A stretch of 35,791 bases of DNA, taken from the NCBI RefSeq assembly GCF_001194135.2, contig NC_068986.1:57510384-57546174 (forward strand), in the 5' to 3' direction. Below the pieces are notes generated by a model. It saw only the letters and a list, made by a program, of their open reading frames with translations. It was not told where the DNA came from and did no database searches. Position numbers and translations under genes: made by a program. The stretch's first letter is position 1; every line of letters begins with the position of its first letter. This DNA is from Octopus bimaculoides. Its lineage: Eukaryota. Of this stretch, positions 1-35,551 are shown one piece after another.

Positions 1-17
1 TATATGGTCGCCTGTAA

Positions 18-235
18 GGCGGCGAGCTGGCAGAAACATTAGCACGCCGGGCGAATTGCTTAGCGGTATTTCGTCTGTCTTTACGTTCTGAGTTCAAATT
101 CTGCCGCGGTTGACTTTGCCTTTCATCCCTTCGGGGTCGATAAATTAAGTGCCAGTTGCGTACTGGGGTCGCTCTAATCGACTGGCCCCCTCCCCAAAAA
201 TTTTGGGCCTTGTGCCTAGAGTAGAAAAGAATATT
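18..235 (+). mobile_element. Group A tRNA-derived SINE, full length
   Basis: GGCGGCGAGCTGGCAGAA head (A-box-like), GAGTTCAAATTC (B-box-like), central CTTTCATCC..GGGGTCGATAAA..CCAGT..ACTGGGGTCG..ATCGACT and 3' GCCTTGTGCC. More than 10 homologous copies occur in this window. Confidence 0.9.
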
Positions 236-3051: not shown

Positions 3052-3652
3052 GAGAGAGTTAGTGCATGAGTGTGCGTGTACCTTTTTGGTGGGTACTGGA
3101 TCGATCTATTATTGATATCGGGCTAGTTTCATTAAAATACAATATCTCCTTCTCAGTAAACACATTGCGTTCTCCTTTTCTTAGAGATTCTTCATAGGAA
3201 ATCCCCACCTAATGTAAAGAATTCTGGGAGTATTCATATAGAAATTTGTACATTTTTGCGATTATACATATTCATTTGGGCGCTTATAGCTATCTTTTAA
3301 TTTATATATAAAAAAAAATACTTTTTTTGAAAGTCGTTATCATAACTTGGTATTTCATGCAGATTTCAGAAGCACGCAAGTACAATGGATATGAAAAGCG
3401 AGGCTGTTTGAAGATTGGCGGATTTATCTGCTTCGAAAGACACGGGACTTTCCCTTTATATCCCTGTCGGAAAATACAATTAGTTCTGAAAATGAAATTT
3501 CATTATTTTCTATAAAAAAAAGTCCTTTTGTCATAAATTTTAAGTGAAGTTGAGTCTTCAAAATTTGTCAATGTTACTTCTCTTGTGCTTTTGAATTCTA
3601 ATATAATGAAATCTAGACTACAAACAACTCGAGCGCAGAAATGTGTCTTATC

Positions 3653-3861
3653 AATAATCCTTTCTACTATAGGCCTGAAATTTTGTGAGAGGTGACCATC
3701 GATTACATCGACCATCGATTACATGGTACTTATACTATCGAACCCAAAAGGATGAACAGCAAAGCCGACCTCAGCGGAATTTTAACCCAGAAGGTGAAGG
3801 CGGACGAAATACCGCAAAGCATTTTGTCCGACGTGCTAACCATTTTGCCAGCTCACCACCT
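3653..3861 (-). mobile_element. Group A SINE with a short internal duplication
   Basis: Colinear with the group A reverse complement. GACCATCGATTACAT is duplicated at 3694 and 3710. Confidence 0.85.
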
Positions 3862-5272
3862 TTAACTGTAACACAAGTTTAATGATATCAAACTCTATGA
3901 TCACATTTAAATCCAGCAAAATTGATAAACTTGAAGAAGCGTTAGCAGTGACCGATACCACGGGAAATACTCTGAAGCGTCAATTATAAATTGCTTTCTG
4001 CAATAAATCCACAGAGTTTGAGCTCTGCAGCTACTTTCTATGTTGCGTGAAGGTTTGATATGTACATTACATTAGTTATTTTTTAAAAGTGTTTGTTAAC
4101 TTCTGTTTGTTAATGTTTTTCTGTATTTTTAGCTCCTTCACTTGAACTCGAGCAATTTTGCAATGGAATAATTAGTAGAAACCTGTGATTTATATTTATT
4201 AACTCGCCAAGAAGAAAATTTCCGTGCGTCAACAACTTAGATGACACGTCTATTTAGAAAGAAGTAATGGGCATTTGTTTCTCGGGAGTACTTTTCTTAA
4301 GTCATTTTCATCATTGTCTGAGCAAGTAAACGTATTTTTCTCTTCATTCAAATCATAGGCTTGCAAGAAACAACTTGGAATCTTAAATATTTCACAAAAC
4401 ACAGAAGAAACCAATACTATGGAAAGGAACATTGTACAGACTGCTATTGAAACTGAAGCGACCACGTGAGCAAACGATTATATTACATAATTGCGCACGT
4501 AGATTAAACTACAAAAATATGGATGAACATTTGCTAAACGTAAGAAATGTTAACGTTTTATAAATGAGCGTCGAACACAAAAATATATCCAAGAGAGACT
4601 TTCAAAACAAAAATTTATATTAACACAACATTCCTCAAAACGCACCGAAAAGAAAGGGAGTTCTACCAAATATATGATAGAAGCAAATGGCACCAATTTC
4701 GTAAGAACCTAATAGCTTTGTCAGTCCTAGAATTAAACCAATAAATAAATAAATAAATTGCACTATTTGGATAACTAAAATTTCTTCTAAAAGTGATGGA
4801 TCATCCAAAATTTACGTTAGGCCGTATGTTGAGTCTGCTCTGAACGAGCTATAGTGATAACTCTTGGCATGCTTCCGTCTTATCTGACCACTCCAACGAA
4901 GCACAATCAATACAACTATCAAAACTACAGAAAAGCTATAAGATATATCTGCGTGAAAGATATATTCACAATGGGAATAAATAATTTGAAATAATAGACA
5001 TTTAAAAATTTCGGGTAATCCCCTTAACTGCAGAAAGCATAATTAGGTTGTAATAATGTGAATTCCTTAATTTGGAATAATCATAAAACCCAAAACTATA
5101 CCTTCTATCTGTTCCGAAGTCTTAGCTGTAGTCGGTAACATAGCTAGAGGGAACGAGGAAGGCAGACAGCTGTGGACGACGCTTTTGCGCAGGGTGGCTA
5201 TTTTAGGTCTGCATTAGTCAGAGGACGACAAACTCTAGAGCGGCCTGGGTGGCATACACTCTAGTTGTGTGT

Positions 5273-5332
<60 letters not shown>

Positions 5333-5364
5333 GTGCGTGCATGTGCGTGCGTGCATGTTCGTGC

Positions 5365-5412
<48 letters not shown>

Positions 5413-5438
5413 AAGAGAGAGAAAGGAAGAGAGAGAAA
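5273..5438 (+). repeat. (TG)n ... (AG)n compound microsatellite
   Basis: Direct reading. Confidence 0.97.
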
Positions 5439-5440
5439 GG

Positions 5441-5930
5441 CATATGTATTTAGGCGTGTATCATGTAATGCAAAGATGTATCAATGTTTTCCATATTGTG
5501 ATAATGACGTCCTGATACCAGTGACATTTGTGCGGAGCTTTTGTTTCAGAAATACTGAGTCTCTTTCAACCGTTCGCGGTGATTTAACGAAAGGGAATGT
5601 GAGCGTTAGAGGTCTCGGCCTTGTTTTTCGCTATTTGTGGAGTAGTTTTCTGCCCATTAAGTTCTTAATTACGCTCTGTAACGTGCTGGTTTGTACCATA
5701 ACATTGTTATAAGTGGTCCGGTAGTATTACTGTAACCGAATGCACATTTAACCAAGCAATTTCAGTACAGGAAACTTGGAGGTTTGAAACAACAGAAGTA
5801 TGTACTTCACTCTCGATGCTTTCATTCAGAATAATTTATAATAGTTACACAACAATTAAAATAAGGAACACAAAATGATGATTCTGCGACACAGTCATAC
5901 ATATAACAGGCCATAGCTATAAACGCAACG
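5441..5930. other. Diverged local duplication, copy 1 (partner 8818-9260); possible decayed coding sequence
   Basis: Colinear anchors shared with the partner: CCATATTG, CAGTGAC, AGTTCTTAA, TTTGTACC, GTAACCG, AATTTCA.TACAGGAAACT, TACTTCACTC, AAAATGATGA, ATAGCTA. Both copies are preceded by (TG)n then (AG)n tracts. Confidence 0.8.
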
Positions 5931-6262: not shown

Positions 6263-6432
6263 ATAGATTTCATGCATGATTGTGAGAAATCTATCTTCAT
6301 GTATCATTGGTTGTTTGTTGCAATGAGCATGGTATCGATTTTCGATGAAACAATTACACTACAATGTTACTCTTGGATATATTAGGTATGGCAGTGATAT
6401 TTCCTTTAAAATTTTACCTAGTGCCATGTATA

Positions 6433-6624
6433 TTCTTTTATTTGTTCAGTCATTTCACTGCGGCCATGCTGGAGCACCGCCTTTAGTCGATCAAATCGAC
6501 CCCCAGGACTTACTCTTTGTAAGCCTAGTACTTATTCTATCGGTACCTTTTGCCGAACCGCTAAGTTACGAGGACCTAGACACGTCACCATCGGTTGTCA
6601 AGCGATGGTCGAAGGACAAACACA

Positions 6625-6666
<42 letters not shown>

Positions 6667-6950
6667 NNNNNNNNNNNNNNNNNNNNNNNNNNNNNNNNNN
6701 NNNNNNNNNNNNNNNNNNNNNNNNNNNNNNNNNNNNNNNNNNNNNNNNNNNNNNNNNNNNATATATATATATATATATATATATATACGACAGGCTTCTT
6801 TCAGTTTCCGTCTACCAAATCCACTCACAAAGCTTTGATCGGCCCGAGGCTATAGTAGAAGACACTTGCCGAAGGTACCACGCAGTGGGACCGAACCCGA
6901 TCCATGTGGTTGGTAAGCAAGCTACTTACCACACAGCCACTCCTGCACCT
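6433..6950 (-). mobile_element. Group B composite SINE, full length, spanning a gap at its internal microsatellite
   Basis: Minus-strand order: tRNA-like head, CCTT.GGCAAG domain, (TA)n/(TG)n tract, GATAGAATAAGTACTAGG..GGGGTCGAT domain, AAGGCGGTGCTCCAGCATGGCCGCAG tail. Confidence 0.9.
6667..6760. other. Assembly gap (N run)
   Basis: N run between (CA)n and (AT)n tracts. Confidence 1.
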
Positions 6951-7338
6951 ATATGTACACAAAGTTTGACCGTTAAACTGTCGCGCAACCCATGAGAAAT
7001 ATCAAACTATTCCTGATAAAGTCATAGCATACTCTCAAAATGTAGGAAATTTTATGAGACACCTACTTGATTTAGGGTCAAAACTGACGGCAGCCACATG
7101 TCTTTTGTAAGACATATTGAGCTTGTGAAAAATTTTACTGCATTCAGATTGCATATAAATCTGCATGGATCAGAAACACGCTATGTGCTAGGTACATATA
7201 AGCCTTATACGACTGGCTTAATTGAATGTCCTGCATATGCATATAAAATTTGGTACTAGGCCAGAAATTGCAAGTGAGGGTTAAGATATTAGATCGGCTC
7301 CGATGTACAACTGGTGCCAATATTAGCTGTTTGGTTAA

Positions 7339-7553
7339 GGCGGCAAGCTGCCAGAATCATTAATGTGCTGGGCAAAATGCTTAGCAACATTCCGTCTGTC
7401 TTTACGTTCTCAGTTCAAATTCCGCAGAAGTTGACTTCACCTTTTATACTTTCGGAGTCGATACAATAAGTACCAGCTAACTACTGGGGTTGATGTAATC
7501 GACTTAGCCTCCCCGCCAAATTGCAGGTCTTGTGCCAATAGTAGAAAGGAATA
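7339..7553 (+). mobile_element. Group A SINE flanked by a ~20-bp direct repeat (putative target-site duplication)
   Basis: Full colinearity with 18-235. AATATTAGCTGTTTGGTTAA at 7319-7338 vs AATATTAGTTGCTTGGTTAA at 7550-7569 (18/20). Confidence 0.88.
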
Positions 7554-7569
7554 TTAGTTGCTTGGTTAA

Positions 7570-7848
7570 GGTGGTGAGCTGGCAGAATCGTGTTAGCACA
7601 CCGGACAAAATGCTGCAGCAGCATTTTGTCCGTCCTTACATTCTGAGTTCAAATTCGGCGGTGACCGACTTTGCGTTACATCGTTTCCGGGCCGATAAAA
7701 TGAGTACCAGTTAAGCACTGGGGATTGATATAATCAACTTACTCCCTCACTGCTGGGGTCAACTTTTTCATCCCTTTTAGGGTTGATAAAGTAAGTACTA
7801 GTCAAGCACTTCCCCGAAAGTGCTGGCCTTGTGCCAAAATTTGAAATT
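7570..7848 (+). mobile_element. Group A SINE followed directly by a second 3'-half fragment
   Basis: GGTGGTGAGCTGGCAGAATCG head to ..ATCAACTTAC (~7748), then TCATCCCTTTTAGGGTTGATAAAGTAAGTAC..GGCCTTGTGCCAAAATTTGAAA. Confidence 0.85.
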
Positions 7849-8817
7849 AGCAAAAATCGAAACTGAGTCGTCAGATTTGTAAGTTTTAATCACGGCGTAG
7901 CAACACTTTGTTCATATGGGAGGCTAGACTTTACATGACAAATCATTCTAGAAAGCCCTAAAACATTTCCCTACAAGGGTAATAACTTGCCATGTCTTTA
8001 GCGCCGATTTCGCAGAGAGTCGTAGACGTCCGGGCGGAATGACGTCTCTACACTTGTCAAGTGTGTTTGCTCATAGCCCGGCCGATTCATTCCCTCGTTG
8101 CTTTAAACATTCGTTCTTATGACTATTACTCAACCTAGTAAACCGCAGCCACAGATATACGACATGAACCGAGCGTATTTTTTTCGCCTGTCTTGGCAAG
8201 CTTAATTACAGAGCCTTTATGATCAGCTCTTGTAAAGCTACAGAAATATTCTTTCTATTGTGTCGACTTTGTTGTTGCAATTTCTAATTCATGACCAACA
8301 TAAAAATGTATTTGTGCGGTGAAGTAAAAGTTACGATTAATTGTTCGCGAGGTGTTGTTGCATGATTTACACGCAGCCACACGCAAACCCAGTCTCGACA
8401 AAACCAATATCAGTTGCTTGGTTACCGTTAAATTTGGTGGAAAGAATCACACACACACACACACACACACATGCGCGCGCGCACAAACACACAAATATAT
8501 ACACAAATACATATATATAAATACAACCCACATATATTTATATACACATTTATATACCCCCACCAAATATACACACACACACCGTGTATGTATGTATATT
8601 ATACATATTCCAAAATATATGCATTTTGAATAATTTTGAGTACCTTTGAACGTGCCTGTGCGTTTGCTCGCGCGCGCGCGCGTTTGTGCGTGTGTGTGTG
8701 TGTGCATTTGTGTGTGTGTTTCTGTGTGTTTGTGTGTGTATGTGTGTAAGAGAGAAAGAAAGAGAGAAACAGAGACACAGAGAAGCAGAGAAACAGACAG
8801 ACAGAAGGAGAGATAGA

Positions 8818-9260
8818 AATGTATTTCATAGAGTCCAAAGAAGTTTCAATTTTGCCATATTGGGATTATGATGTCATAATGTCAGTGACGTTTCTCCGAC
8901 GCTTTTCTCTTAAAAACTTTCAGTCGTTTACACGTTGAAAGACTAATGTAAAATCTAAGTTGTATTCGCTTTATTTTTCGGAGTTTGTGGGGTTGGTTTT
9001 TATGTATCTTTGAGTTCTTAAGCAGCCTCAGTAACATGTGGTTTTGTACCTTAACATAGATGCAATGTGTACAGTAGTGTTACGGTAACCGTATGAAATT
9101 TTAAGCAGATAATTTCATTACAGGAAACTCGGGGTTTCAACAAGAAAGATATACTTCACTCATTCATGCAGCATAACTTATTGTAATTCAATGACCATAA
9201 AAATGATGAATACAGAATAATGGCTACAATATACAAGCAGATTATAGCTACAAATATGGT
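8818..9260. other. Diverged local duplication, copy 2 (partner 5441-5930)
   Basis: Same ordered anchors as copy 1, offset by about 3.37 kb. Confidence 0.8.
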
Positions 9261-9497: not shown

Positions 9498-9912
9498 GTG
9501 TCTGTATGTGTGTGGGTATTTATTTGTCTACGTGCGCTTGTATGACACATGCACGCACACAAATCGTATGTATCTGCAAAAGGCCCTTAAGAAACTTCGG
9601 GAGTGAATCTCCCAAAATTTCTTATGTTAGAAGGTTCTTTAGTTAGATATTGGAGTAGTCGTTCAATCCCTCTTAAATCACAACCCAATACATCGATTCA
9701 CATGAGACATCCGCCTCGGGCGATGATCTTATGGGTGCGGCACATTTGGATCTGCTGTATATAACTTATATGCTGAAGCAGGTGCGGCAAATCCACAGGT
9801 TACCCGGGTGGGACACAATAAAGCTACGCACAACCTTCGCTTCATATTGATAAAACTGAAAACAACACAGAATTGTCAACTTAATTACTAATAATTTAAA
9901 TTCACCCCATAA

Positions 9913-10129
9913 AGCGGCGAGCTGGCAGAATTATTAGCACGCCGGGCAGAATGCTTAGTGGCATTTCGTAAGTCATCACATTCTGAGTTCAAATTCCGAT
10001 GACGTTGACTGCGTCTGTTATATTTTCGGGATCGATAAAATAGGTACCAGTAAGAACACTTAGGGTCGATGTAATCGACTTACCCCTTTCACCAAAATTG
10101 CTAGCCTTGTACCAGTATTTGAATCCATT
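9913..10129 (+). mobile_element. Group A SINE, full length
   Basis: GCGGCGAGCTGGCAGAATTATTAGCACGCCGGGC..GAGTTCAAATTCC..GGGTCGATGTAATCGACTTAC..GCCTTGTACC. Confidence 0.88.
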
Positions 10130-15346: not shown

Positions 15347-15394
<48 letters not shown>

Positions 15395-15408
15395 TTGCCG
15401 ATAGAATA

Positions 15409-15874
15409 NNNNNNNNNNNNNNNNNNNNNNNNNNNNNNNNNNNNNNNNNNNNNNNNNNNNNNNNNNNNNNNNNNNNNNNNNNNNNNNNNNNNNNNNNNNN
15501 NNNNNNNNNNNNNNNNNNNNNNNNNNNNNNNNNNNNNNNNNNNNNNNNNNNNNNNNNNNNNNNNNNNNNNNNNNNNNNNNNNNNNNNNNNNNNNNNNNNN
15601 NNNNNNNNNNNNNNNNNNNNNNNNNNNNNNNNNNNNNNNNNNNNNNNNNNNNNNNNNNNNNNNNNNNNNNNNNNNNNNNNNNNNNNNNNNNNNNNNNNNN
15701 NNNNNNNNNNNNNNNNNNNNNNNNNNNNNNNNNNNNNNNNNNNNNNNNNNNNNNNNNNNNNNNNNNNNNNNNNNNNNNNNNNNNNNNNNNNNNNNNNNNN
15801 NNNNNNNNNNNNNNNNNNNNNNNNNNNNNNNNNNNNNNNNNNNNNNNNNNNNNNNNNNNNNNNNNNNNNNNNNN
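15409..15874. other. Assembly gap (N run)
   Basis: N run. Confidence 1.
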
Positions 15875-15905
15875 CACACACATACATATATCGTTTACCT
15901 TTTAA

Positions 15906-16036
15906 CTTTTACTTGTTTCGGGCATTAGACTGCAGCCATGCTGGGGCACCGCCTTGAAGAATTTTAATTGAATGATTAAGCTTGGTACTTATTCTATCGA
16001 ACGCTTATGCTAAACTGCAAGATTAAGAGGTCGTAA

Positions 16037-16037: not shown

Positions 16038-16086
<49 letters not shown>

Positions 16087-16207
16087 TTGCCGATAGAATA
16101 GATACAAGCTTTAAAAAAAAAAGTACCGGGGTCGAAACGTTCGATTAAAAATCCTTGAAGGCGGTGCTCCAGCATAGCCGCAGTCTAATGACTGAAACAA
16201 GTAAAAA
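16087..16207 (+). mobile_element. Group B SINE, 3' module
   Basis: CCGATAGAATA..GGGGTCGA..AAGGCGGTGCTCCAGCATAGCCGCAGTCTAATGACTGAAACAAGTAAAA. Confidence 0.82.
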
Positions 16208-16711
16208 GGAGAAAAAACAAACTATATATAACAATATCACTAGAGTGTCGATTTCAAATTCTGCTTAGGTCTGTTTTAACTTTTATACCTTGATAAAAAT
16301 AACACTAGTCGGTAAAAATTAAAAGTTGGGTTGGTTTAATCGATGACATGCACATGGAGGTGCTCCATCCTGGCCGTAAAATGGTAAGTGATGCAAAGTA
16401 AATCCATGTCTGATCAATCAATCTTAAACCCCTGCTAGCCCCTTATATACATCGATATAAAACTGATATTTTCAGATATTAATCCATAAATTATGTTACA
16501 GTGGGTGCTGCTGCCGTTCTTGCTGCTACTGCTGCCGTTGCTGCTGTTGCTGCTGCCGCTATGGCTATTCTTGCTGTTGTTTTGTTGTTGTTGTTTCTAT
16601 CATCTGTGTTTTCATTAAAAACTATATATTTATCTACTTATTCATGTTTCTTGATAACATAAGAATAGATGATATCAATACAAACAAGCAGGTAAACAAA
16701 TGAACAAGGCA

Positions 16712-16769: not shown

Positions 16770-16954
16770 GTTATACCGCACAAACACAAACATTAATAAG
16801 CAAAATAGCAATAATGAGAATGTCGTCATAAAACTTATCACTTAGTATTCTCCCGAACTGTATAAAGACGTATTCTTGGAAGAAGAAACGATAAATATTT
16901 ACATACAAACGTGCATGCATATATACATACACATCTGTCAGTCTCTCTCTTTCC

Positions 16955-16992
<38 letters not shown>

Positions 16993-17242
16993 NNNNNNNN
17001 NNNNNNNNNNNNNNNNNNNNNNNNNNNNNNNNNNNNNNNNNNNNNNNNNNNNNNNNNNNNNNNNNNNNNNNNNNNNNNNNNNNNNNNNNNNNNNNNNNNN
17101 NNNNNNNNNNNNNNNNNNNNNNNNNNNNNNNNNNNNNNNNNNNNNNNNNNNNNNNNNNNNNNNNNNNNNNNNNNNNNNNNNNNNNNNNNNNNNNNNNNNN
17201 NNNNNNNNNNNNNNNNNNNNNNNNNNNNNNNNNNNNNNNNNN
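16993..17242. other. Assembly gap (N run)
   Basis: N run between (TC)n and (AT)n/(GATA)n tracts. Confidence 1.
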
Positions 17243-17252
17243 ATATATATAT

Positions 17253-17288
<36 letters not shown>

Positions 17289-18775
17289 GGAATAGATAAA
17301 CAGACATGTATATATAAATACGTATAAGTGTGTATATATATATAACACACACACACACACACACAACACATAACATATCTAAATATACTTATATCAGTGT
17401 AACTAAGTGTGTACGCATATGCATCGTAACAAAACCATGCATCCCTCTTTTTAAATGATCTATTCATCAATTTGATATTCTTCTCAGAAAATTTCTATAT
17501 TGTTGACAATTTTATCGGCATTTCTGCAGCTATAATGCATTATTTATTAAGGCATTATAAATTTTATGTTTGCTTCGAAACCAAATATATGTACATTTTA
17601 ATGTTTTCAGTGGAAGAAGACAAATTTATTAGGGTTATTCAATTTAATAAAATAAATATTATAAATATATTCAAAAGGCTATCTCTTTTAAAATATAACA
17701 TTCCCTCAAACAATATAAAAGTGGCTGCAGTTTTCGCATTTTCTTCTGTCTTGAAATTCTATGCAAAGTACTCGAAGCATCTTTCCGTTTTTCCTCATTC
17801 AGATTATATGTATAGCTCCTATAGATAATGTATCCACCAATCTATTTATCATGGATACACAAATACACACACGTAAAAAGACATACATACACATACACAT
17901 ACTTACACATACACACAGATATATATCGGATTAATTAATAAGAATATATATTAGGAAGTCAACCAATATTCAAAAATAGATTAACATTAGTAGTTTAATA
18001 GTATTAATTATAAAAACGACTCTGAGTTTAAATTCGATATTGTTGAAGTTTCTTATTGTCTTCAAATTACTCTTAATAAGAGACTGAAATTCTCTAAGAC
18101 ATAACAATATAGATATGAAGGTTCTACTCGTCCTTTCAGAGATCAGACTCATAGTTGCAATCGTTGTCAGCACGGAGTTATTTGCCAGCTCAGAGAAATG
18201 CGATGTTGTGTAATATAAATGTATACTCTACATATACTGAGTAAAAAAAATTATCACTACAAACGTCGGTTTATTTGGAGATAATAGTTTGGCTGTATTC
18301 CAACAAGTCGGTGGACATTTTTGTCTATTTCTTGGAAATACCTCATTAATAACTTCAGATATATCGCCCTAAGTCATTGTCACTAGCTAAATTTCTTTAA
18401 TGTTACCCTTAACTTTCCAACAAATGAACAGGAACTTATACTAAACCTAATTCAAAACTCATATTAAGTATAGACATCCTTAGCTTTCAAAAATACTGGT
18501 ATTGATAGAAATAACTTCAAACTGTGGTCAGATAAAATGAGAAGCTTCTGTTTATGTGTGTTTATTGCGTTGTCTCCATGGGAGGCTATAGCATTCATGG
18601 TGTAGCTGACCTTGTAATCCGTTTATCTAGTTTACCACGACACTGTCAGTATATCAGTTACCCACACACATCTCATGTTTTTACAGGGGTTTGGCCTTGG
18701 CAGTCTCACGTATTATGAACGGCCACACCAAGAATAGATTCATAAATGATCTGATATGCTTTTCTTTTATTCTCT

Positions 18776-18987
18776 TATTCTTTTACTTGTTTCAGTAATT
18801 TGACTGTGACCATGCTGGGGCACCGCCTTTAGTCGAACAAATCGACCCTAGGACTTATTCTTTGTTAGCCTAGTACTTATTCTATCGTTCTCTTTTGTCA
18901 ACCGCTAGGTTACGGAGACGTAAACACACCAGCATCGGTTGTCAAGTGAAGTTGGGAGGACAAACACTGACACAAACACACACACAC

Positions 18988-19020
<33 letters not shown>

Positions 19021-19376
19021 CGACGGGCTTCTTTCAGTTTCCGTCTACCAAATCCACTCACAAAGCTTTGGTCGGCCCGAGGCTATAGTACATGGCACTT
19101 GCCCAATGTGTCATGCAGTGCGACTGAACCCGAAACCGTGTAGTTGGTAAGCAAGCTACTTTATTTCATTTAATTGGATATAAAAGCCGTACATAGAGGT
19201 AGTAGCTGCGGGCTGGACAAGAACTCAATGATGATGGAATGAAAGAAATGGTTGGTGGGAGAAGCAAACAACGCCCGCCGATTGTTGCATTCTCGAAAAC
19301 ATTGTTCTCTCTTGTTTTTTTTTTAAACAACAAAACAAAATGAGGTAGTAAACCTCACACAGCCACTCCTGCACCT
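18776..19376 (-). mobile_element. Group B composite SINE, full length, interrupted in its head by a 194-bp insert
   Basis: Colinear with 6433-6950. GCAAGCTACTT ends at 19161 and CACACAGCCACTCCTGCACCT resumes at 19356. Confidence 0.9.
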
Positions 19377-21370: not shown

Positions 21371-21751
21371 GTAAGCAACTCAGGGTAACGTAATTGTGTG
21401 AAACAGAGAGAGAGAAAAAAGAGACAGACAGACAGAAAGACAGAGATTGAGGGAGAGGAGGGGGAGAGATGGATAGATAGAAAGGAAAAGAAAGAAAAGA
21501 TTCGACCAAGTACAGGAAGAACTAGTACTTTTACAGTTAGAGCGCAGACGGCAGGAAAGAATAACGCGAATCAATCTCGTTGAAACTAACGATACGTCGC
21601 ATTTACCGTCTTTTGTATGTATGTATGTATGTATGAATGTATGTATGTATGCATGCATGAATGTATGTATGTATGTATGTATGTATGAATGAATGTACGT
21701 ATGAATGAATATATCTATGAGTGTATAAGTATTTAATAATTATATATGATA

Positions 21752-21973
21752 GGGCGGCGAGATGACAGAACCGTTAACATACCGGGTGAAATACTTAGCA
21801 GCATTTCGTCTGTCTTTTCGTTGTGAGTTCTAATTCCGCCGATATCGACTTTATCTTTTATCCCTTTCGAAGTCGATAAAATAAGCACCAGTTGAGCACT
21901 GGTATCGATGTAATTGACTTACCCTCACCCCCACGAAATAGCTGGCTTTGTACCAAAATTGGAAACCAATAAT
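21752..21973 (+). mobile_element. Group A SINE, full length
   Basis: GGGCGGCGAGATGACAGAA..GAGTTCTAATTCCGCC..GTCGATAAAATAAGCACCAGTTGAGCACTGG..TGTACCAAAATTGGAAACC. Confidence 0.85.
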
Positions 21974-22011
21974 TCTTCAATGTGATGTATTTTATATATT
22001 CTTTTATCCTT

Positions 22012-22430
22012 TATCCTTTTATTTGTTGCAGTCAGTTGACTGCAAACGTGCTGGAGTACCACCTCGAAGGGTTTTAGCCGAGCAAATCGACCCTAGGACT
22101 TATTCTTTAAGCCTAGTACTTATTTTATTTGAAACTTTTGCCGAACCGGTAAGTTACATGGACCTAAACACACCAACACCGTTTGTCAAGAGGTGATGGG
22201 GAGGGGACAAACGCAGACACAAAGACGCACACACAGAGCTACATACATGCACACACACACAAACATATACGACGGGCATTTTTCAGTTTCCATCTACAAA
22301 ATCCGCTCAAGGCTTTGGTCGGCCCGAGACTATAGTAGAAGACACTTAGTCCAAGGCTCCACGCAGTGCGACTGAACCCAAAACAATGTGGTTGGGAATC
22401 AAGCTTCTTACCACACAGCTACGCCTGCGC
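22012..22430 (-). mobile_element. Group B composite SINE, full length
   Basis: Colinear with the other B copies, including a CA-rich internal tract at ~22210-22268. Confidence 0.87.
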
Positions 22431-22880
22431 TTATTTATAATTTTGTTGGCACTAACTTCACAATTTCGCCAGTAAATCCAAACTGATTGTAGGTATAGTT
22501 ACATAAACACTGCACCCTACACTTAATTTGTTTCTCTTTCTGTCTTTATTTCTTTTTCCTTTACGCATCTGATCTGAAATTTGGACTCATGCAACAGCGT
22601 TTTCTTTTCGAACTGGAACAGTCTCAGCATTCATTGAGGCAGTCATTGACCACCAACATTCTCTCAAAAGCACGAACACACCTCCTCTGTCGGTGCCCTG
22701 TTCAAAGTCACTCTTCTGTGGGTCGTTGCTTTTTTTTTTATTTAGTGAAAAGCGTTGCTGTACTCTATATTAGGAAAAAATGGCCTTGTTATACGTGCAA
22801 AGCTAAACTGCATGCTTGTGGATTCCAACCGTCTCTCAGCTCTGGTATTGGAAACTTCCTGTCAGATTGCCGGTATGTGA

Positions 22881-22882
<2 letters not shown>

Positions 22883-22959
<77 letters not shown>

Positions 22960-23510
22960 AATTGAGATTCAATTGAATTAGGTACTTAAGTTGAAGCATC
23001 AAGTCAGTGCAGTATTGTCCGTACAACTCAAAGTAAGATGAATAGAATTAAAATAAGTAACAGTATATCAAGAGTTGATGCAGTGCGACCGTTTTAAGAT
23101 TAAAAAAAAAGACTAATAAATTAAAAATTAATCACAATCCGTTACAAGCTATGACCCTAACAAACTGCATACAGTTCTTAGAAGTGTAGTATATTTTGAG
23201 CTACATTAGTAGCAACATGGACTTTTTCCCTCTTCTTGCTCTATTGGAGAATTTGAGTAAAATTATATTAATGTGTTCAACTGATTAAAAAATTCTATTT
23301 ATTTATGCAGCTGAGGATAGCCCTGCATTTAAATTGATGTAATGATTGCATTGTCTAATTAAATGGAGCCGCTTGAAACGGTCGTGCTGCATCACCTCTT
23401 GATATCCTGTTGCTTATTTTAATTTTATTCACCTTACTTTGAGTTGTACGGACAATACTGCACTGACTTGATGCTTCAACTTAAGTACCTAATTCAATTG
23501 AATCTCAATT

Positions 23511-23579
<69 letters not shown>
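22883..23579. repeat. Long inverted repeat / foldback structure (MITE-like)
   Basis: Arms 22955-23098 and 23372-23515 (144 bp each). The outer 83 bp are identical and the inner 61 bp have 8 mismatches. The spacer is 273 bp. Flanks are (AT)n(AG)n and (CT)n(AT)n in mirror image. Confidence 0.92.
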
Positions 23580-23840
23580 NNNNNNNNNNNNNNNNNNNNN
23601 NNNNNNNNNNNNNNNNNNNNNNNNNNNNNNNNNNNNNNNNNNNNNNNNNNNNNNNNNNNNNNNNNNNNNNNNNNNNNNNNNNNNNNNNNNNNNNNNNNNN
23701 NNNNNNNNNNNNNNNNNNNNNNNNNNNNNNNNNNNNNNNNNNNNNNNNNNNNNNNNNNNNNNNNNNNNNNNNNNNNNNNNNNNNNNNNNNNNNNNNNNNN
23801 NNNNNNNNNNNNNNNNNNNNNNNNNNNNNNNNNNNNNNNN
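23580..23840. other. Assembly gap (N run)
   Basis: N run directly after the right foldback arm. Confidence 1.
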
Positions 23841-23871
<31 letters not shown>

Positions 23872-23889
23872 TAGATAGATAGATAGATA

Positions 23890-24003
23890 GATCACTGACC
23901 ACTACACATTTTCTTCTCTCCTTGTTTCTCTCCTTATTTCATTCCGTGTTCCTTTCTGTTGAAGAGCGCAGGCTCGAAATGTTAAAGACTTTCTCTATTC
24001 CCG
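23890..24003 (+). mobile_element. Short interspersed remnant with a hammerhead-like core (Penelope-like terminal repeat?)
   Basis: Homologous to the reverse complement of 35245-35362. It contains CTGTTGA-A-GAGC-GCAG-GCTC-GAAA. The Penelope assignment is inferred from motif resemblance only. Confidence 0.55.
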
Positions 24004-24361
24004 ATATATATATATATTTATATATATATATATATTTATATATATATACACACACACGCACACACACACACACAAATATATATATATAGGAAGTAACCTT
24101 TATTGCCACCTAAACATGGATGTTCTATAAGAACAGACGATACTGCTAGTTTAACCCCAGGAGGACGCCTCCTCCAACTGATTATTCAGTTCACTTCGTA
24201 CTCGATATATATCCAACAATTCCAGCCCCGAGACCAATATCGTTTGTTCTTACAGAACACTCAGGTTTAGGTGGCGATAAACATTACTTCTCGGTATAAA
24301 TACCACTTTAGTCTCTAATAGTCTAACAGAAATTTTCTGAATATGTACATATATATATAAT

Positions 24362-24760
24362 CGTTTACTTGATTCAGTCATTAGACAGCAGCCATACTGG
24401 AGCACCACCTTCGGAGAGTTTTGCTGAAAAGAATCGACCCCAGTACTTAATTTTTTGCTAAGCCTGGTACTTATTCTATCGGTCTCTTATGCCGAAACGC
24501 TAAGTTACAGGAACGTAAGCACACCAACACCAGTTGTCAAGCGGTAGTGGGTAACAAAGACACAAAGACACATACATAAATATATACATACATAAATATA
24601 TACATACATGACGGGCTTCTTCCGGTTTCCGTTTACCAAATCCACTTACATGGCTTTGGTCGGCCTGACGTTATAGTAGAAAACACTTACAGAAATTGCT
24701 ACGCAGTGGGACGGAACCCGGAACCATGTGGTTTGGAAGCAAGCTTGTTACCACACGGTT
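24362..24760 (-). mobile_element. Group B composite SINE, full length
   Basis: Colinear with the other B copies. The internal tract is (CATA/TA)-rich at ~24555-24608. Confidence 0.87.
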
Positions 24761-25253
24761 ACATGTATGTATGCATGTACGTATAATAAAACAAAAAGAC
24801 AAATGGTCAGGCAACAAGTATCGAGTCAGATGCATAAAGAAGTATAGATTTAATGAAGTCGACAAAAGTTCCGACTGTAGGAAGTCTTCAACGTTTGCAA
24901 TGTAAACAGTGGTCTTCAGAAAGATGCAGAAGGTGAGAGTAGTTTTCTCCGTAAATAAAAGTTATCATAGGTAAAAGCCATTCTAACTGAAACTAAAAAA
25001 CAAAAACCGTTTGTCCCTTAGAGGTGGTTCACTATGTGTATATATATGTATATATATATATATACATACATGGCTACATTCATATACACTCATATATACA
25101 CTCATGCGGTGCATCTAATTACGTACACTCATTTATTGAAACTTTCAAAAGCAAAATGTGTGTGTGTGCGCGTGTGTGCGCGCATGAAGGGGGGCGGAGG
25201 GTGTATAAAAGTGTTTAGCAGCCTATGATCATTCTGTGTGTACGTATTTGTGT

Positions 25254-25707: not shown

Positions 25708-25788
25708 CCGTAGTCGTCGTTGTCGTTGTCGTCGTCGTCGTCGTCGTCGTTGTCGTCGTCGTCGTCGTTGTCGTCGTCGTCGTCGTCA
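25708..25788 (+). repeat. (GTC)n microsatellite with GTT variants
   Basis: Direct reading. It explains the poly-Thr/poly-Ser ORFs. Confidence 0.97.
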
Positions 25789-27945: not shown

Positions 27946-28155
27946 TGGTTTTAAATTTTGGCAGAAGGCCAGCAAGTTTGTGGGAAGGGATAAGTCTATT
28001 ACATCGACCCCAGTGTTCAACTGGTACTTATTTTATCGACCTCGAAAGGATGAAAGGTAAAGTTGACCTCGGAGACATTTGAACTCAGAACGTAATGTCG
28101 GAAGAAATAACACATCGCATTCCGGCGCGGTAACGCATCTGACAGTTTGCAGCCT
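27946..28155 (-). mobile_element. Group A SINE, full length
   Basis: ATTACATCGACCCCAGTGTTCAACTGGTACTTATTTTATCGACCTCGAAAGGATGAAAGGTAAAGTTGACCTCGG..TTTGAACTCAGAACGTAA. Confidence 0.87.
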
Positions 28156-28313
28156 AAGAGTATGTTATATTAATTAAAGAAAGTCTTAAATAGTGCTAAA
28201 AAAAACACGATGTTCACGAGTGAAAATTTATTGAACATATATCTGCCTGGGTAGAATTTACCTTCAGTTAAACAACACCTGCAACATCAACAATCACTTT
28301 GGGTACCTTCCAC

Positions 28314-28820
28314 TGACAGTCAAAAACTCGAAACATCGATGTCTGGACTTCCTGGTAGATGGAAACACTGAACAAACTGGGTGTTTTCACACCTTTTACC
28401 ATAAAAGAAATGCTTTCCTCACAGTAACTGGGATATATTTGCCTTTTAGCATTTGAAATATTTCACAAACATATTTTAAGTAACCTACATTTTGCCCAAC
28501 ACTGCTTGGCGATAACATTTCTTTATTTTCTTCGATCGGGCGATCTACCAGCGCAAATCAGTCAACGTGTTAACTAAACTTTTCATAAAGCTATTACTTT
28601 ATAAGTTTGTTCAGAGTTGCCTCTCTCAGGTACATCCCATTGACAAGAGTCAAAAGACTCGAAACTTTGATGTTTTGGATTCTTGATGGCGACACTGAAC
28701 AAGCCGAGTGTTTTCACTCCTTTTACCATAAAAGATATTTTCTCCACGATAACTGCAGTGTATTTGTCTTTTAGCAGTTGAAATGTCACAAACATATTTT
28801 AACTAACCCAAATTTTGCTT
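28314..28820. repeat. Tandem duplication of a ~180-bp segment (28314-28497 and 28641-28820)
   Basis: Shared CTCGAAAC, ACACTGAACAA, GTGTTTTCAC.CCTTTTACCATAAAAGA, CTTTTAGCA.TTGAAAT and TCACAAACATATTTTAA. Confidence 0.88.
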
Positions 28821-35244: not shown

Positions 35245-35362
35245 TAACGCTCGGAAAGTGAGAAAGTATTTTACGTTTCGAGCCAACGCTCTTCGACAGA
35301 AAGGAACACAGAAATAAACAGGGAGTGAAAATAGAAAAAGGTTTAATGGCTAGTGATCGATC
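35245..35362 (-). mobile_element. Second copy of the hammerhead-like-core remnant
   Basis: The minus strand reads GTGTTCCTTT-CTGTCGA-A-GAGC-GTTG-GCTC-GAAA-CGTAAAATACTTTCTC, matching 23946-23995. Confidence 0.55.
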
Positions 35363-35551
35363 TTGGCAAATGCCGGACAGAGGTCTCAAACAAGAGAGCT
35401 AGAAAGAAAGGGAGACAATAATGTAGGGGTGATCCCAATACGAAGGTGCGCGTGCATGTGTATGTGAGAGCGTGTATGTGCGTGTGGAAGGGGGCAGGTG
35501 ACATTGACGTGTGCGTGTGTGCATGTGTAGGTGTGTAGATGATGGTGTAGA

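What the first reader, a model, noticed from the sequence alone, without database searches (positions are those of the whole stretch)
22883..23579. Foldback element with graded arm identity, wrapped in mirror-image microsatellites
Seen: two 144-bp arms (22955-23098, 23372-23515) around a 273-bp spacer. The outer 83 bp are identical and the inner 61 bp differ at 8 positions. Faint complementarity seems to continue into the spacer (CAATCCGTTACA vs the reverse complement CAATCATTACA; CTGCATA on both sides). The symmetry extends outward through (AG)n/(CT)n and (AT)n. Known: some MITEs target or carry (TA)n tracts, and long hairpins are ADAR and Dicer substrates. Inference: this is either a microsatellite-associated foldback/MITE family, or an old palindrome whose outer ends are homogenised by arm-to-arm conversion. 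If transcribed it forms a dsRNA stem of at least 144 bp. Caveat: the right arm abuts a gap, so the perfect outer part could have been copied by the assembler. The 8 inner mismatches show the inverted repeat itself is real.
Basis: partly seen in the sequence, partly recalled or inferred. Interest (0 to 1): 0.7.

Follow-up and report, generated by a model that had tools for sequence, protein, structure and literature searches.

The report
Hairpin-forming inverted repeat flanked by microsatellites
A real 144-bp inverted repeat around a 273-bp loop lies between simple-sequence tracts in a gap-rich, repeat-dense animal scaffold (probably octopus); it is most likely an ordinary non-coding foldback/MITE-type transposon copy, but no genome of the organism could be searched, so its copy number is untested.

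Summary
The inverted repeat is there as described. The arms are 22955-23098 and 23372-23515. The outer 83 bp are identical, and all 8 mismatches fall in the inner 61 bp (clustering p about 0.001). One mismatch pair looks like CpG decay on both arms, so these are two real, separately mutated copies.

Two details do not hold. The spacer shows no complementarity above chance. The microsatellite "mirror" is inexact: (AT)n-AC-(AG)19 on the left against (CT)15-(TA)n on the right. (AT)n is its own reverse complement, so only (AG)n/(CT)n needs explaining.

The window is non-coding, 36% GC and full of SINEs and microsatellites. It has 7 N-gaps, six abutting a simple repeat and one 17 bp from one. The arm has no second copy in the window. 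Searches of viral, metagenome and prokaryote DNA and of the protein collections found nothing, so copy number could not be tested.

- **Best reading (about 0.4):** a non-autonomous long-TIR DNA transposon inserted in a (TA)n tract.
- **Rivals:** a local palindrome with a converted outer segment, two head-to-head retroposon tails, or an assembler-made outer right arm.

It would fold into a long dsRNA if transcribed. Such structures are reported to be unusually common in octopus. I rate it ordinary and of low interest.

The parts
22883..22915 (.). Left (AT)16.5 tract. Read here as the left half of a (TA)n target tract.
   Evidence: TRF; sequence
22916..22954 (+). Junction C followed by (AG)19. 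This is the outermost part of the left arm, and the junction reads TATA|CAGAG.
22955..23037 (+). Left arm, outer 83 nt. It is 100% complementary to 23433-23515.
23038..23098 (+). Left arm, inner 61 nt, with 8 mismatches to its partner (87% identity).
23099..23371 (.). 273-nt AT-rich spacer or loop. It has no self-complementarity above chance, no ORF longer than 30 aa and no copy elsewhere in the window.
23372..23432 (-). Right arm, inner 61 nt.
23433..23515 (-). Right arm, outer 83 nt, identical to the reverse complement of 22955-23037.
23516..23545 (-). (CT)15, the partner of the left (AG)19. It is four units shorter and its junction lacks the C/G.
23545..23579 (.). Right (TA)17.5 tract, cut off by the gap, so its true length is unknown.
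23580..23840 (.). Assembly gap of 261 N. It hides the right flank and any target-site duplication.
23841..23892 (+). (AG)n(AGAT)n immediately after the gap. It is in the same orientation as the left (AG)n, so the symmetry does not visibly continue past the gap.

Best explanation
The segment from about 22916 to 23545 is one copy of a short, non-coding DNA transposon of the foldback/MITE type. It has long terminal inverted repeats, made of the 144-nt arms plus an outer (AG)n tract. The terminal part of the repeats is perfect and the subterminal part is imperfect. A non-palindromic 273-nt core sits between them. The element lies inside a (TA)n microsatellite, which it split into the two (AT)n tracts now seen on either side.

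Shown: the anatomy, the absence of coding capacity, and the mismatch pattern expected of two separately mutated copies.

Inferred: that the element moved as a unit through a transposase supplied in trans, that (TA)n was the target, and that (AG)n grew from the element's own CAGAG-type terminus.

If the region is transcribed, the arms would pair into a stem of at least 144 bp. This is the kind of substrate that ADAR and Dicer enzymes act on. No transcription was shown.
For: - The element is about 560-630 bp, with 144-nt arms at 94% identity, and is non-coding. Its longest internal ORF is 30 aa.
- Identity is perfect at the termini and drops abruptly to 87% inside (p about 0.001). The spacer has no palindromic remnant. 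This is the usual TIR-plus-subterminal layout rather than a decaying perfect palindrome.
- Only (AG)n/(CT)n needs to belong to the repeat, because (AT)n on both sides is what a split TA microsatellite looks like.
- The left junction reads TA|CAG, as at TA-targeting Tc1/mariner-type ends (sequence; the motif is from my own knowledge).
- TA-microsatellite-targeting TIR elements are documented (MuTAnT, PMC4486113).
- In Octopus vulgaris, Tc1-Mariner is the most numerous recently active TIR group, and 65 MITE families were annotated (PMC13282606).
- A second small hairpin element (24090-24290) also directly follows a compound (AT)n microsatellite 1.2 kb away.
Against: - There is no second copy of the arm or the spacer in the 33 kb of readable window, and none in any searchable collection. 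Those collections are not expected to hold this genome, so multi-copy status, the defining property, is untested.
- No target-site duplication can be read, because the right flank is simple repeat and then a gap.
- The right terminus lacks the G that would mirror the left CAG.
- A simple repeat as the outermost part of a TIR is unusual.
- The arm contains no internal direct repeats that would suggest paired transposase-binding sites.
Confidence: 0.4

Rival explanations
1. This is a single-copy local inverted duplication (a palindrome with a spacer) that arose at an (AT)n/(AG)n compound microsatellite. The arms have since diverged by about 13%. A recent arm-to-arm gene-conversion tract re-homogenised the outer 83 bp and the adjoining (AG)n.
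For: - The arm is single copy in the window.
- There is an abrupt switch from 0 of 83 to 8 of 61 mismatches, p about 0.001, as expected at the edge of a conversion tract.
- The symmetry includes the flanking (AG)n/(CT)n.
- The CpG-decay pattern at arm positions 130/131 indicates that the inner arms are old.
Against: - There is no trace of palindromic sequence in the 273-nt spacer.
- The simple-repeat tracts that would lie inside the conversion tract differ in length and at the junction, although microsatellites mutate fast.
- After the gap the sequence is (AG)n(AGAT)n, not the mirror of the left flank.
- Local inverted duplications are rarer than TIR elements in repeat-rich animal genomes (my own knowledge).
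Confidence: 0.25
2. The outer right arm is an assembly product. A real inverted repeat exists, covering the inner part and some of the outer part. The identical 83 bp plus (CT)n(TA)n up to the gap were then filled in by the short-read assembler or gap closer following the collapsed left-arm path.
For: - The perfect segment ends in simple repeat directly at a 261-N gap.
- Six of the 7 gaps in the window abut simple repeats and the seventh lies 17 bp from one. This shows the assembler breaks there.
- At another gap in this window the 62 nt before the gap (15347-15408) are 100% identical to 16039-16100, 165 nt after it. So exact duplicates at gap edges do occur in this assembly.
Against: - The two outer tracts are not copies of each other: (AG)19 against (CT)15, and a junction C present on the left only. 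The duplicate at the 15.4-kb gap, by contrast, is exact including its microsatellite length.
- Both inner arm-to-spacer junctions are unique sequence inside one gap-free contig, so two copies of at least the start of the shared segment must exist.
Confidence: 0.15
3. These are two independent, 5'-truncated, head-to-head copies of a retroposon (a LINE 3' end or a SINE) whose 3' tail is a (CT)n(TA)n-type simple repeat. The arm is the part the two copies share. The better-conserved outer part is the 3' region the reverse transcriptase must recognise.
For: - The simple repeats sit exactly where 3' tails would be, at the outer end of each arm.
- Retroposons with SSR 3' tails that seed microsatellite families are documented for the RTE clade (PMC2887409).
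- The window is dense in SINEs, including head-to-head SINE pairs.
- Another repeat in the window (23885-24004, matching the reverse complement of 35251-35363) ends at or about 70 bp from (AT)n in its two copies.
Against: - A family abundant enough to land twice within 600 bp should appear again in 33 kb, and it does not.
- Two independent old insertions should differ along their whole length, not show 0 of 83 and then 8 of 61 mismatches.
- No target-site duplications or poly-A-like features are visible.
Confidence: 0.1

Closest known systems
Foldback-type DNA transposons with long, partly repetitive terminal inverted repeats (Drosophila FB, Galileo; Tetris of D. virilis, PMC4079207 listed)
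   Same: Long inverted arms around a short non-palindromic core, no coding capacity in short copies, and tandem or simple repeats inside the arms.
   Different: In those elements the arms are hundreds to thousands of bp long and are built from family-specific tandem subrepeats, and the families are multi-copy. Here the only repetitive part is a dinucleotide (AG)n at the tip, and copy number is unknown.
TIR elements that target TA microsatellites (MuTAnT Mutator-like elements of Medicago, TAFT of maize; PMC4486113)
   Same: An element with inverted ends flanked on both sides by a variable number of TA repeats.
   Different: MuTAnTs are plant MULEs with a known mudrA-like autonomous partner and 218 copies. 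No partner, superfamily or other copy is known for this element.
Palindromic MITEs that fold on themselves and are hyper-edited (about 200-bp Harbinger repeat of Xenopus tropicalis; PMC5625713)
   Same: A single element that can form a tight long dsRNA without a neighbouring inverted copy. The same paper reports that Octopus bimaculoides has an exceptionally high fraction of loci (4.4e-3) able to form long, near-perfect dsRNA.
   Different: The loop here is long (273 nt). No transcription or editing data were available, and membership of the Harbinger group was not tested.
Microsatellite-carrying MITEs and retroposon tails in molluscs and insects (DTC84 of Donax trunculus, PMC3879986, listed; RTE 3' SSR tails in Lepidoptera, PMC2887409)
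   Same: Simple repeats physically tied to the ends or interior of mobile elements. This explains why microsatellite flanks recur in such genomes.
   Different: Those families have defined consensus modules and many copies. No sequence similarity to them was or could be tested here.
Large genomic palindromes kept uniform by arm-to-arm gene conversion (for example primate sex-chromosome palindromes and plastid inverted repeats; my own knowledge)
   Same: Inverted arms with a unique spacer and much higher arm identity than neutral divergence predicts in part of the arm.
   Different: Those arms are kilobases to megabases long and uniformly near-identical. Here only 83 bp (plus simple repeat) are identical and the remaining 61 bp are 13% diverged.

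Membership tests
MITE / non-autonomous TIR transposon | Terminal inverted repeats | tested here: met
   144-nt arms at 94% identity, or 208 nt counting the simple repeats.
MITE / non-autonomous TIR transposon | Small size (under about 800 bp) and no coding capacity | tested here: met
   561 bp from arm to arm. The longest internal ORF is 30 aa. There were no Pfam hits in window ORFs.
MITE / non-autonomous TIR transposon | Target-site duplication flanking the TIRs | not testable with these tools
   Both flanks are (AT)n and the right one runs into a 261-N gap.
MITE / non-autonomous TIR transposon | Many dispersed copies in the genome | tested here: inconclusive
   There is no other copy in the 33 kb of readable window. 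Viral, metagenome and prokaryote DNA collections gave no hits. No eukaryote genome was searchable.
Tc1/mariner-type element (TA target, 5'-CAG terminus) | TA dinucleotide flanking both ends, with ends beginning CAG...CTG | tested here: inconclusive
   The left junction is TATA|CAGAG. The right junction is CTCTCT|ATAT, without the expected G. The motif is recalled from memory.
Foldback (FB-like) element | Long arms composed largely of tandem subrepeats | tested here: not met
   Only the outer (AG)n is repetitive. The 144-nt arm has no internal direct repeat above chance.
Palindrome maintained by arm-to-arm gene conversion | Arm identity higher than expected from the age of the duplication, with tract-like boundaries | tested here: inconclusive
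   0 of 83 against 8 of 61 mismatches, p about 0.001. This is compatible with conversion but equally with a TIR layout. Orthologues or population data are needed.
Known structured RNA or miRNA precursor (Rfam) | Match to a curated covariance model at its gathering score | tested here: not met
   There were 0 matches at gathering thresholds in the whole window. Sub-threshold hits are only microsatellite-driven, such as mir-297.

The most novel reading that the evidence does not exclude
The element represents an undescribed cephalopod foldback family that carries and seeds (AG)n/(TA)n microsatellites. Its outer arms would be kept identical by intra-element conversion, and its transcripts would be long hairpin substrates for the unusually active cephalopod ADAR system or for siRNA production.
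Probability: 0.05. Interest if true: 0.5.

Novelty: new member of a known kind. Interest (0 to 1): 0.15.

Why it matters
If it belongs to a family, it would add one more example of mobile elements seeding or targeting microsatellites. It would also be one of the many self-pairing repeats behind the very high dsRNA potential and hyper-editing reported for octopus (PMC5625713). As a single locus in a draft scaffold, with no evidence of transcription, it changes nothing in current understanding. Its main practical value is as a test case for assembly quality at simple-repeat-bounded gaps.

Tried and rejected
- **Other copies in the window:** BLASTN with word size 7 found only the two arms.
- **Public DNA collections:** exact 24-29-mers from the conserved outer arm and from the terminus found nothing in viral contigs, metagenome contigs (both scans used) or genome contigs. 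These hold essentially no animal genomes, so the result says nothing about copy number.
- **Route to orthologous loci through a gene:**
  - The left-flank ORF gave no candidates in the protein collection.
  - A 4895-aa concatenation of 77 non-repeat ORFs of at least 45 aa, plus both arm ORFs, gave nothing at E<=1e-3.
  - Pfam on 96 such ORFs gave nothing.
  - I conclude that the window has no detectable exon, so neither the locus in other assemblies nor the organism could be obtained this way.
- **Known RNA families:** none at gathering score. Only microsatellite-like sub-threshold miRNA hits appeared.
- **tRNA-derived heads:** ARAGORN found none.
- **Residual palindrome in the spacer:** rejected.
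- **Internal direct repeats in the arm (paired binding sites):** rejected.
- **Bacterial promoter/terminator scan:** run once, uninformative for a eukaryote.
- **Confirming the organism from printed SINE sequence in papers:** no paper holds the strings. The octopus attribution therefore rests on my memory of the SINE sequence only.
- **10-nt match between the inner arm and the neighbouring SINE (D9):** dismissed as chance, because dozens of such 10-mers are expected.

Full report
**What is in the sequence**

Reading 22600-24200 and running the repeat finder confirm the structure. A script gives the details.
- The arms are 22955-23098 and 23372-23515, 144 nt each, separated by 273 nt.
- They differ at exactly 8 positions, all between arm positions 84 and 141.
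- The outer 83 nt are therefore identical, and the inner 61 nt are 87% identical.
- Arm against arm scores E=4e-61 by BLASTN.
- With the adjoining simple repeats, the ungapped pairing runs to 208 nt at 94% (I1).
- Placing all 8 mismatches in the inner 61 of 144 sites has probability about 0.0008-0.0016. The two-tier identity is therefore a real feature of the sequence as assembled.

**What the mismatches say**

Six mismatches are transitions and two are transversions. At positions 130/131 the left arm reads TG where the right arm (reverse-complemented) reads CA. This is the pattern expected if an ancestral CpG decayed independently on each arm. These are two separately mutated copies, not sequencing noise.

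**What does not hold**

- *Spacer.* It carries no residual palindrome. Its best local self-complementary alignment is matched or beaten by 326 of 500 shuffles. A global alignment of its two halves, anchored at the arms, is matched or beaten by 424 of 500.
- *Microsatellite mirror.* It is inexact. The left side is (AT)16.5-AC-(AG)19. The right side is (CT)15-(TA)17.5, with no C/G at the junction, and is cut off by the gap.
- *(AT)n.* It is its own reverse complement, so (AT)n on both sides is not evidence of symmetry. Only (AG)n/(CT)n needs to be part of the repeat.
- *Beyond the gap.* After the 261-N gap (23580-23840) the sequence resumes with (AG)n(AGAT)n, in the same orientation as the left (AG)n. 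It is not a mirror of the left flank.

**Context**

- The window is 36% GC and has 7 N-gaps. Six abut a simple repeat directly and the seventh (15409) lies 17 bp beyond one. It has 84 TRF rows.
- It holds many copies of two SINE-like families at 70-90% identity.
- Two copies of the larger family (21999-22434 and 24353-24762) bracket the region in direct orientation at about 75% identity. They look like unrelated old insertions.
- The sequence of that family matches what I remember of the abundant octopus SINE. I could not confirm this with any tool, so the octopus attribution is a recollection, not a result.
- No tRNA genes, no Rfam family at gathering score and no Pfam domain in 96 non-repeat ORFs were found.
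- The foldback is non-coding. Its longest internal ORF is 30 aa.

**Copy number, the key question, could not be answered**

- The arm and the spacer have no other copy in the readable 33 kb.
- Exact-word scans of the viral, metagenome and prokaryote-genome collections were empty. These do not contain animal genomes.
- I tried to reach the same locus in other assemblies through a gene. The left-flank ORF and a 4895-aa concatenation of 77 candidate ORFs plus the arm ORFs found nothing. The window has no detectable exon, and this route is closed.

**Folding**

As RNA, 22883-23579 folds into one continuous stem of -373 kcal/mol, with z = -37.6. On the + strand five of the eight mismatches become G·U pairs, so only three positions are unpaired. 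The strand asymmetry is not significant. Whether the region is transcribed is unknown.

**Interpretation**

The most economical reading is a non-autonomous long-TIR DNA transposon (foldback/MITE type) sitting in a (TA)n tract.
- It is small, non-coding and has long inverted ends. The ends are perfect at the tips and imperfect subterminally.
- The core is not palindromic, and TA repeats lie on both sides.
- The left junction reads TA|CAG, reminiscent of TA-targeting elements (from memory). The right junction lacks the mirrored G.
- TA-microsatellite-targeting TIR elements are known (PMC4486113).
- Tc1-Mariner and MITE families are numerous in Octopus vulgaris (PMC13282606).
- A second small hairpin (24090-24145 / 24235-24290; 56-nt arms, 84%) directly follows another compound (AT)n microsatellite 1.2 kb away.

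Against this reading, multi-copy status and a target-site duplication are both untested, and a dinucleotide repeat at the TIR tip is unusual. I give it about 0.4.

**Rivals**

1. *Single-copy inverted duplication with a recently converted outer tract (0.25).* It explains the abrupt identity step. It gets no support from the spacer and has to accept differing simple-repeat lengths inside the converted tract.
2. *Assembler-made outer right arm (0.15).* The perfect part ends in simple repeat at a gap. This same window holds an exact 62-nt duplicate at another gap edge (15347-15408 = 16039-16100). However, the two outer tracts of the foldback are not exact copies of each other. Both arm-to-spacer junctions also lie in one gap-free contig.
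3. *Two head-to-head 5'-truncated retroposon copies with simple-repeat tails (0.1).* There is precedent in RTE-type tails (PMC2887409). It is hard to reconcile with no further copies in the window and with the 0-of-83 against 8-of-61 pattern.

**Comparison with what is known, and verdict**

Whichever reading is right, the kind of object is familiar.
- Self-pairing repeats and inverted repeat pairs are the main source of long dsRNA and ADAR hyper-editing across animals.
- Octopus bimaculoides is reported to have an exceptionally high fraction of loci (4.4e-3) able to form long near-perfect dsRNA (PMC5625713).
- At that rate, roughly one arm's worth of such sequence is expected per window of this size.
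- This window also contains several SINE-SINE inverted pairs.

I therefore rate the finding as a real but ordinary feature, at most a new member of a known kind. The question that remains open is a technical one: copy number and long-read confirmation.

Noticed in passing
window 24090-24290: A second small hairpin element: 56-nt arms (24090-24145 / 24235-24290, 84% complementary) around an 89-nt loop. It starts directly after a compound (AT)n(AC)n(AT)n microsatellite (24004-24088). It is single copy in the window. Its first 10 nt (AGGAAGTAAC) resemble the big arm's start (AGGAAATAAT), which is probably chance.
   Followed up: partly
window 15347-15408 and 16039-16100 (gap 15409-15874): The 62 nt just before this gap are 100% identical to a stretch 165 nt after it, including the same (AC)n length and 18 nt of unique sequence. 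This looks like a gap-edge duplication made by the assembler or gap closer.
   Followed up: partly
window 15886-15972 and 16140-16229: Head-to-head fragments of the larger SINE-like family (about 81% complementary over 90 nt, spacer about 167 nt). This is another potential dsRNA-forming pair.
   Followed up: no
window gaps at 6667, 11996, 15409, 16993, 23580, 28949, 34770: Six of the seven N-gaps abut a microsatellite on at least one side, and the one at 15409 lies 17 bp beyond one. The gap at 6667-6760 sits inside the internal (AC)n/(AT)n region of a SINE-like copy. The pattern is typical of a short-read scaffold assembly.
   Followed up: partly
window 16942-17288 and 23516-23892: Two compound simple-repeat loci of similar make-up, each interrupted by a gap: (CT)n | gap | (AT)n(AGAT)n, and (CT)n(TA)n | gap | (AG)n(AGAT)n. 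Their unique flanks are unrelated.
   Followed up: partly
window 23885-24004 and 35251-35363: A roughly 120-nt repeat (76% identity, opposite orientation). One copy ends directly at an (AT)n tract and the other lies about 70 bp from one, and both are near a gap. This may be a microsatellite-tailed interspersed element.
   Followed up: no
window 15-235, 637-850, 968-1125, 3652-3862, 7336-7555, 7567-7748, 9910-10113, 21750-21971, 27946-28155: At least nine copies of a SINE-like repeat of about 220 nt, at 70-80% identity and in both orientations. Several form inverted pairs within 1 kb, for example 16-235 against 637-850.
   Followed up: no
window 6426-6934, 18762-19161, 21999-22434, 24353-24762: Four copies of a SINE-like repeat of about 420 nt with an internal (AC)n/(AT)n region. 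It matches my recollection of the abundant octopus SINE. This was not verified by any tool, and ARAGORN finds no tRNA-like head.
   Followed up: partly
window 25709-25787: A (CGT)26 trinucleotide tract with about 25 CpGs in 150 nt. This is an unusual CpG-dense island in a 36% GC, otherwise CpG-poor region.
   Followed up: no
window 5291-5880 and 8682-9222; 28302-28495 and 28629-28818: Two further direct repeat pairs that are not part of the SINE families: about 590 nt at 68% identity, and about 195 nt at 78% identity. Their nature is unknown.
   Followed up: no
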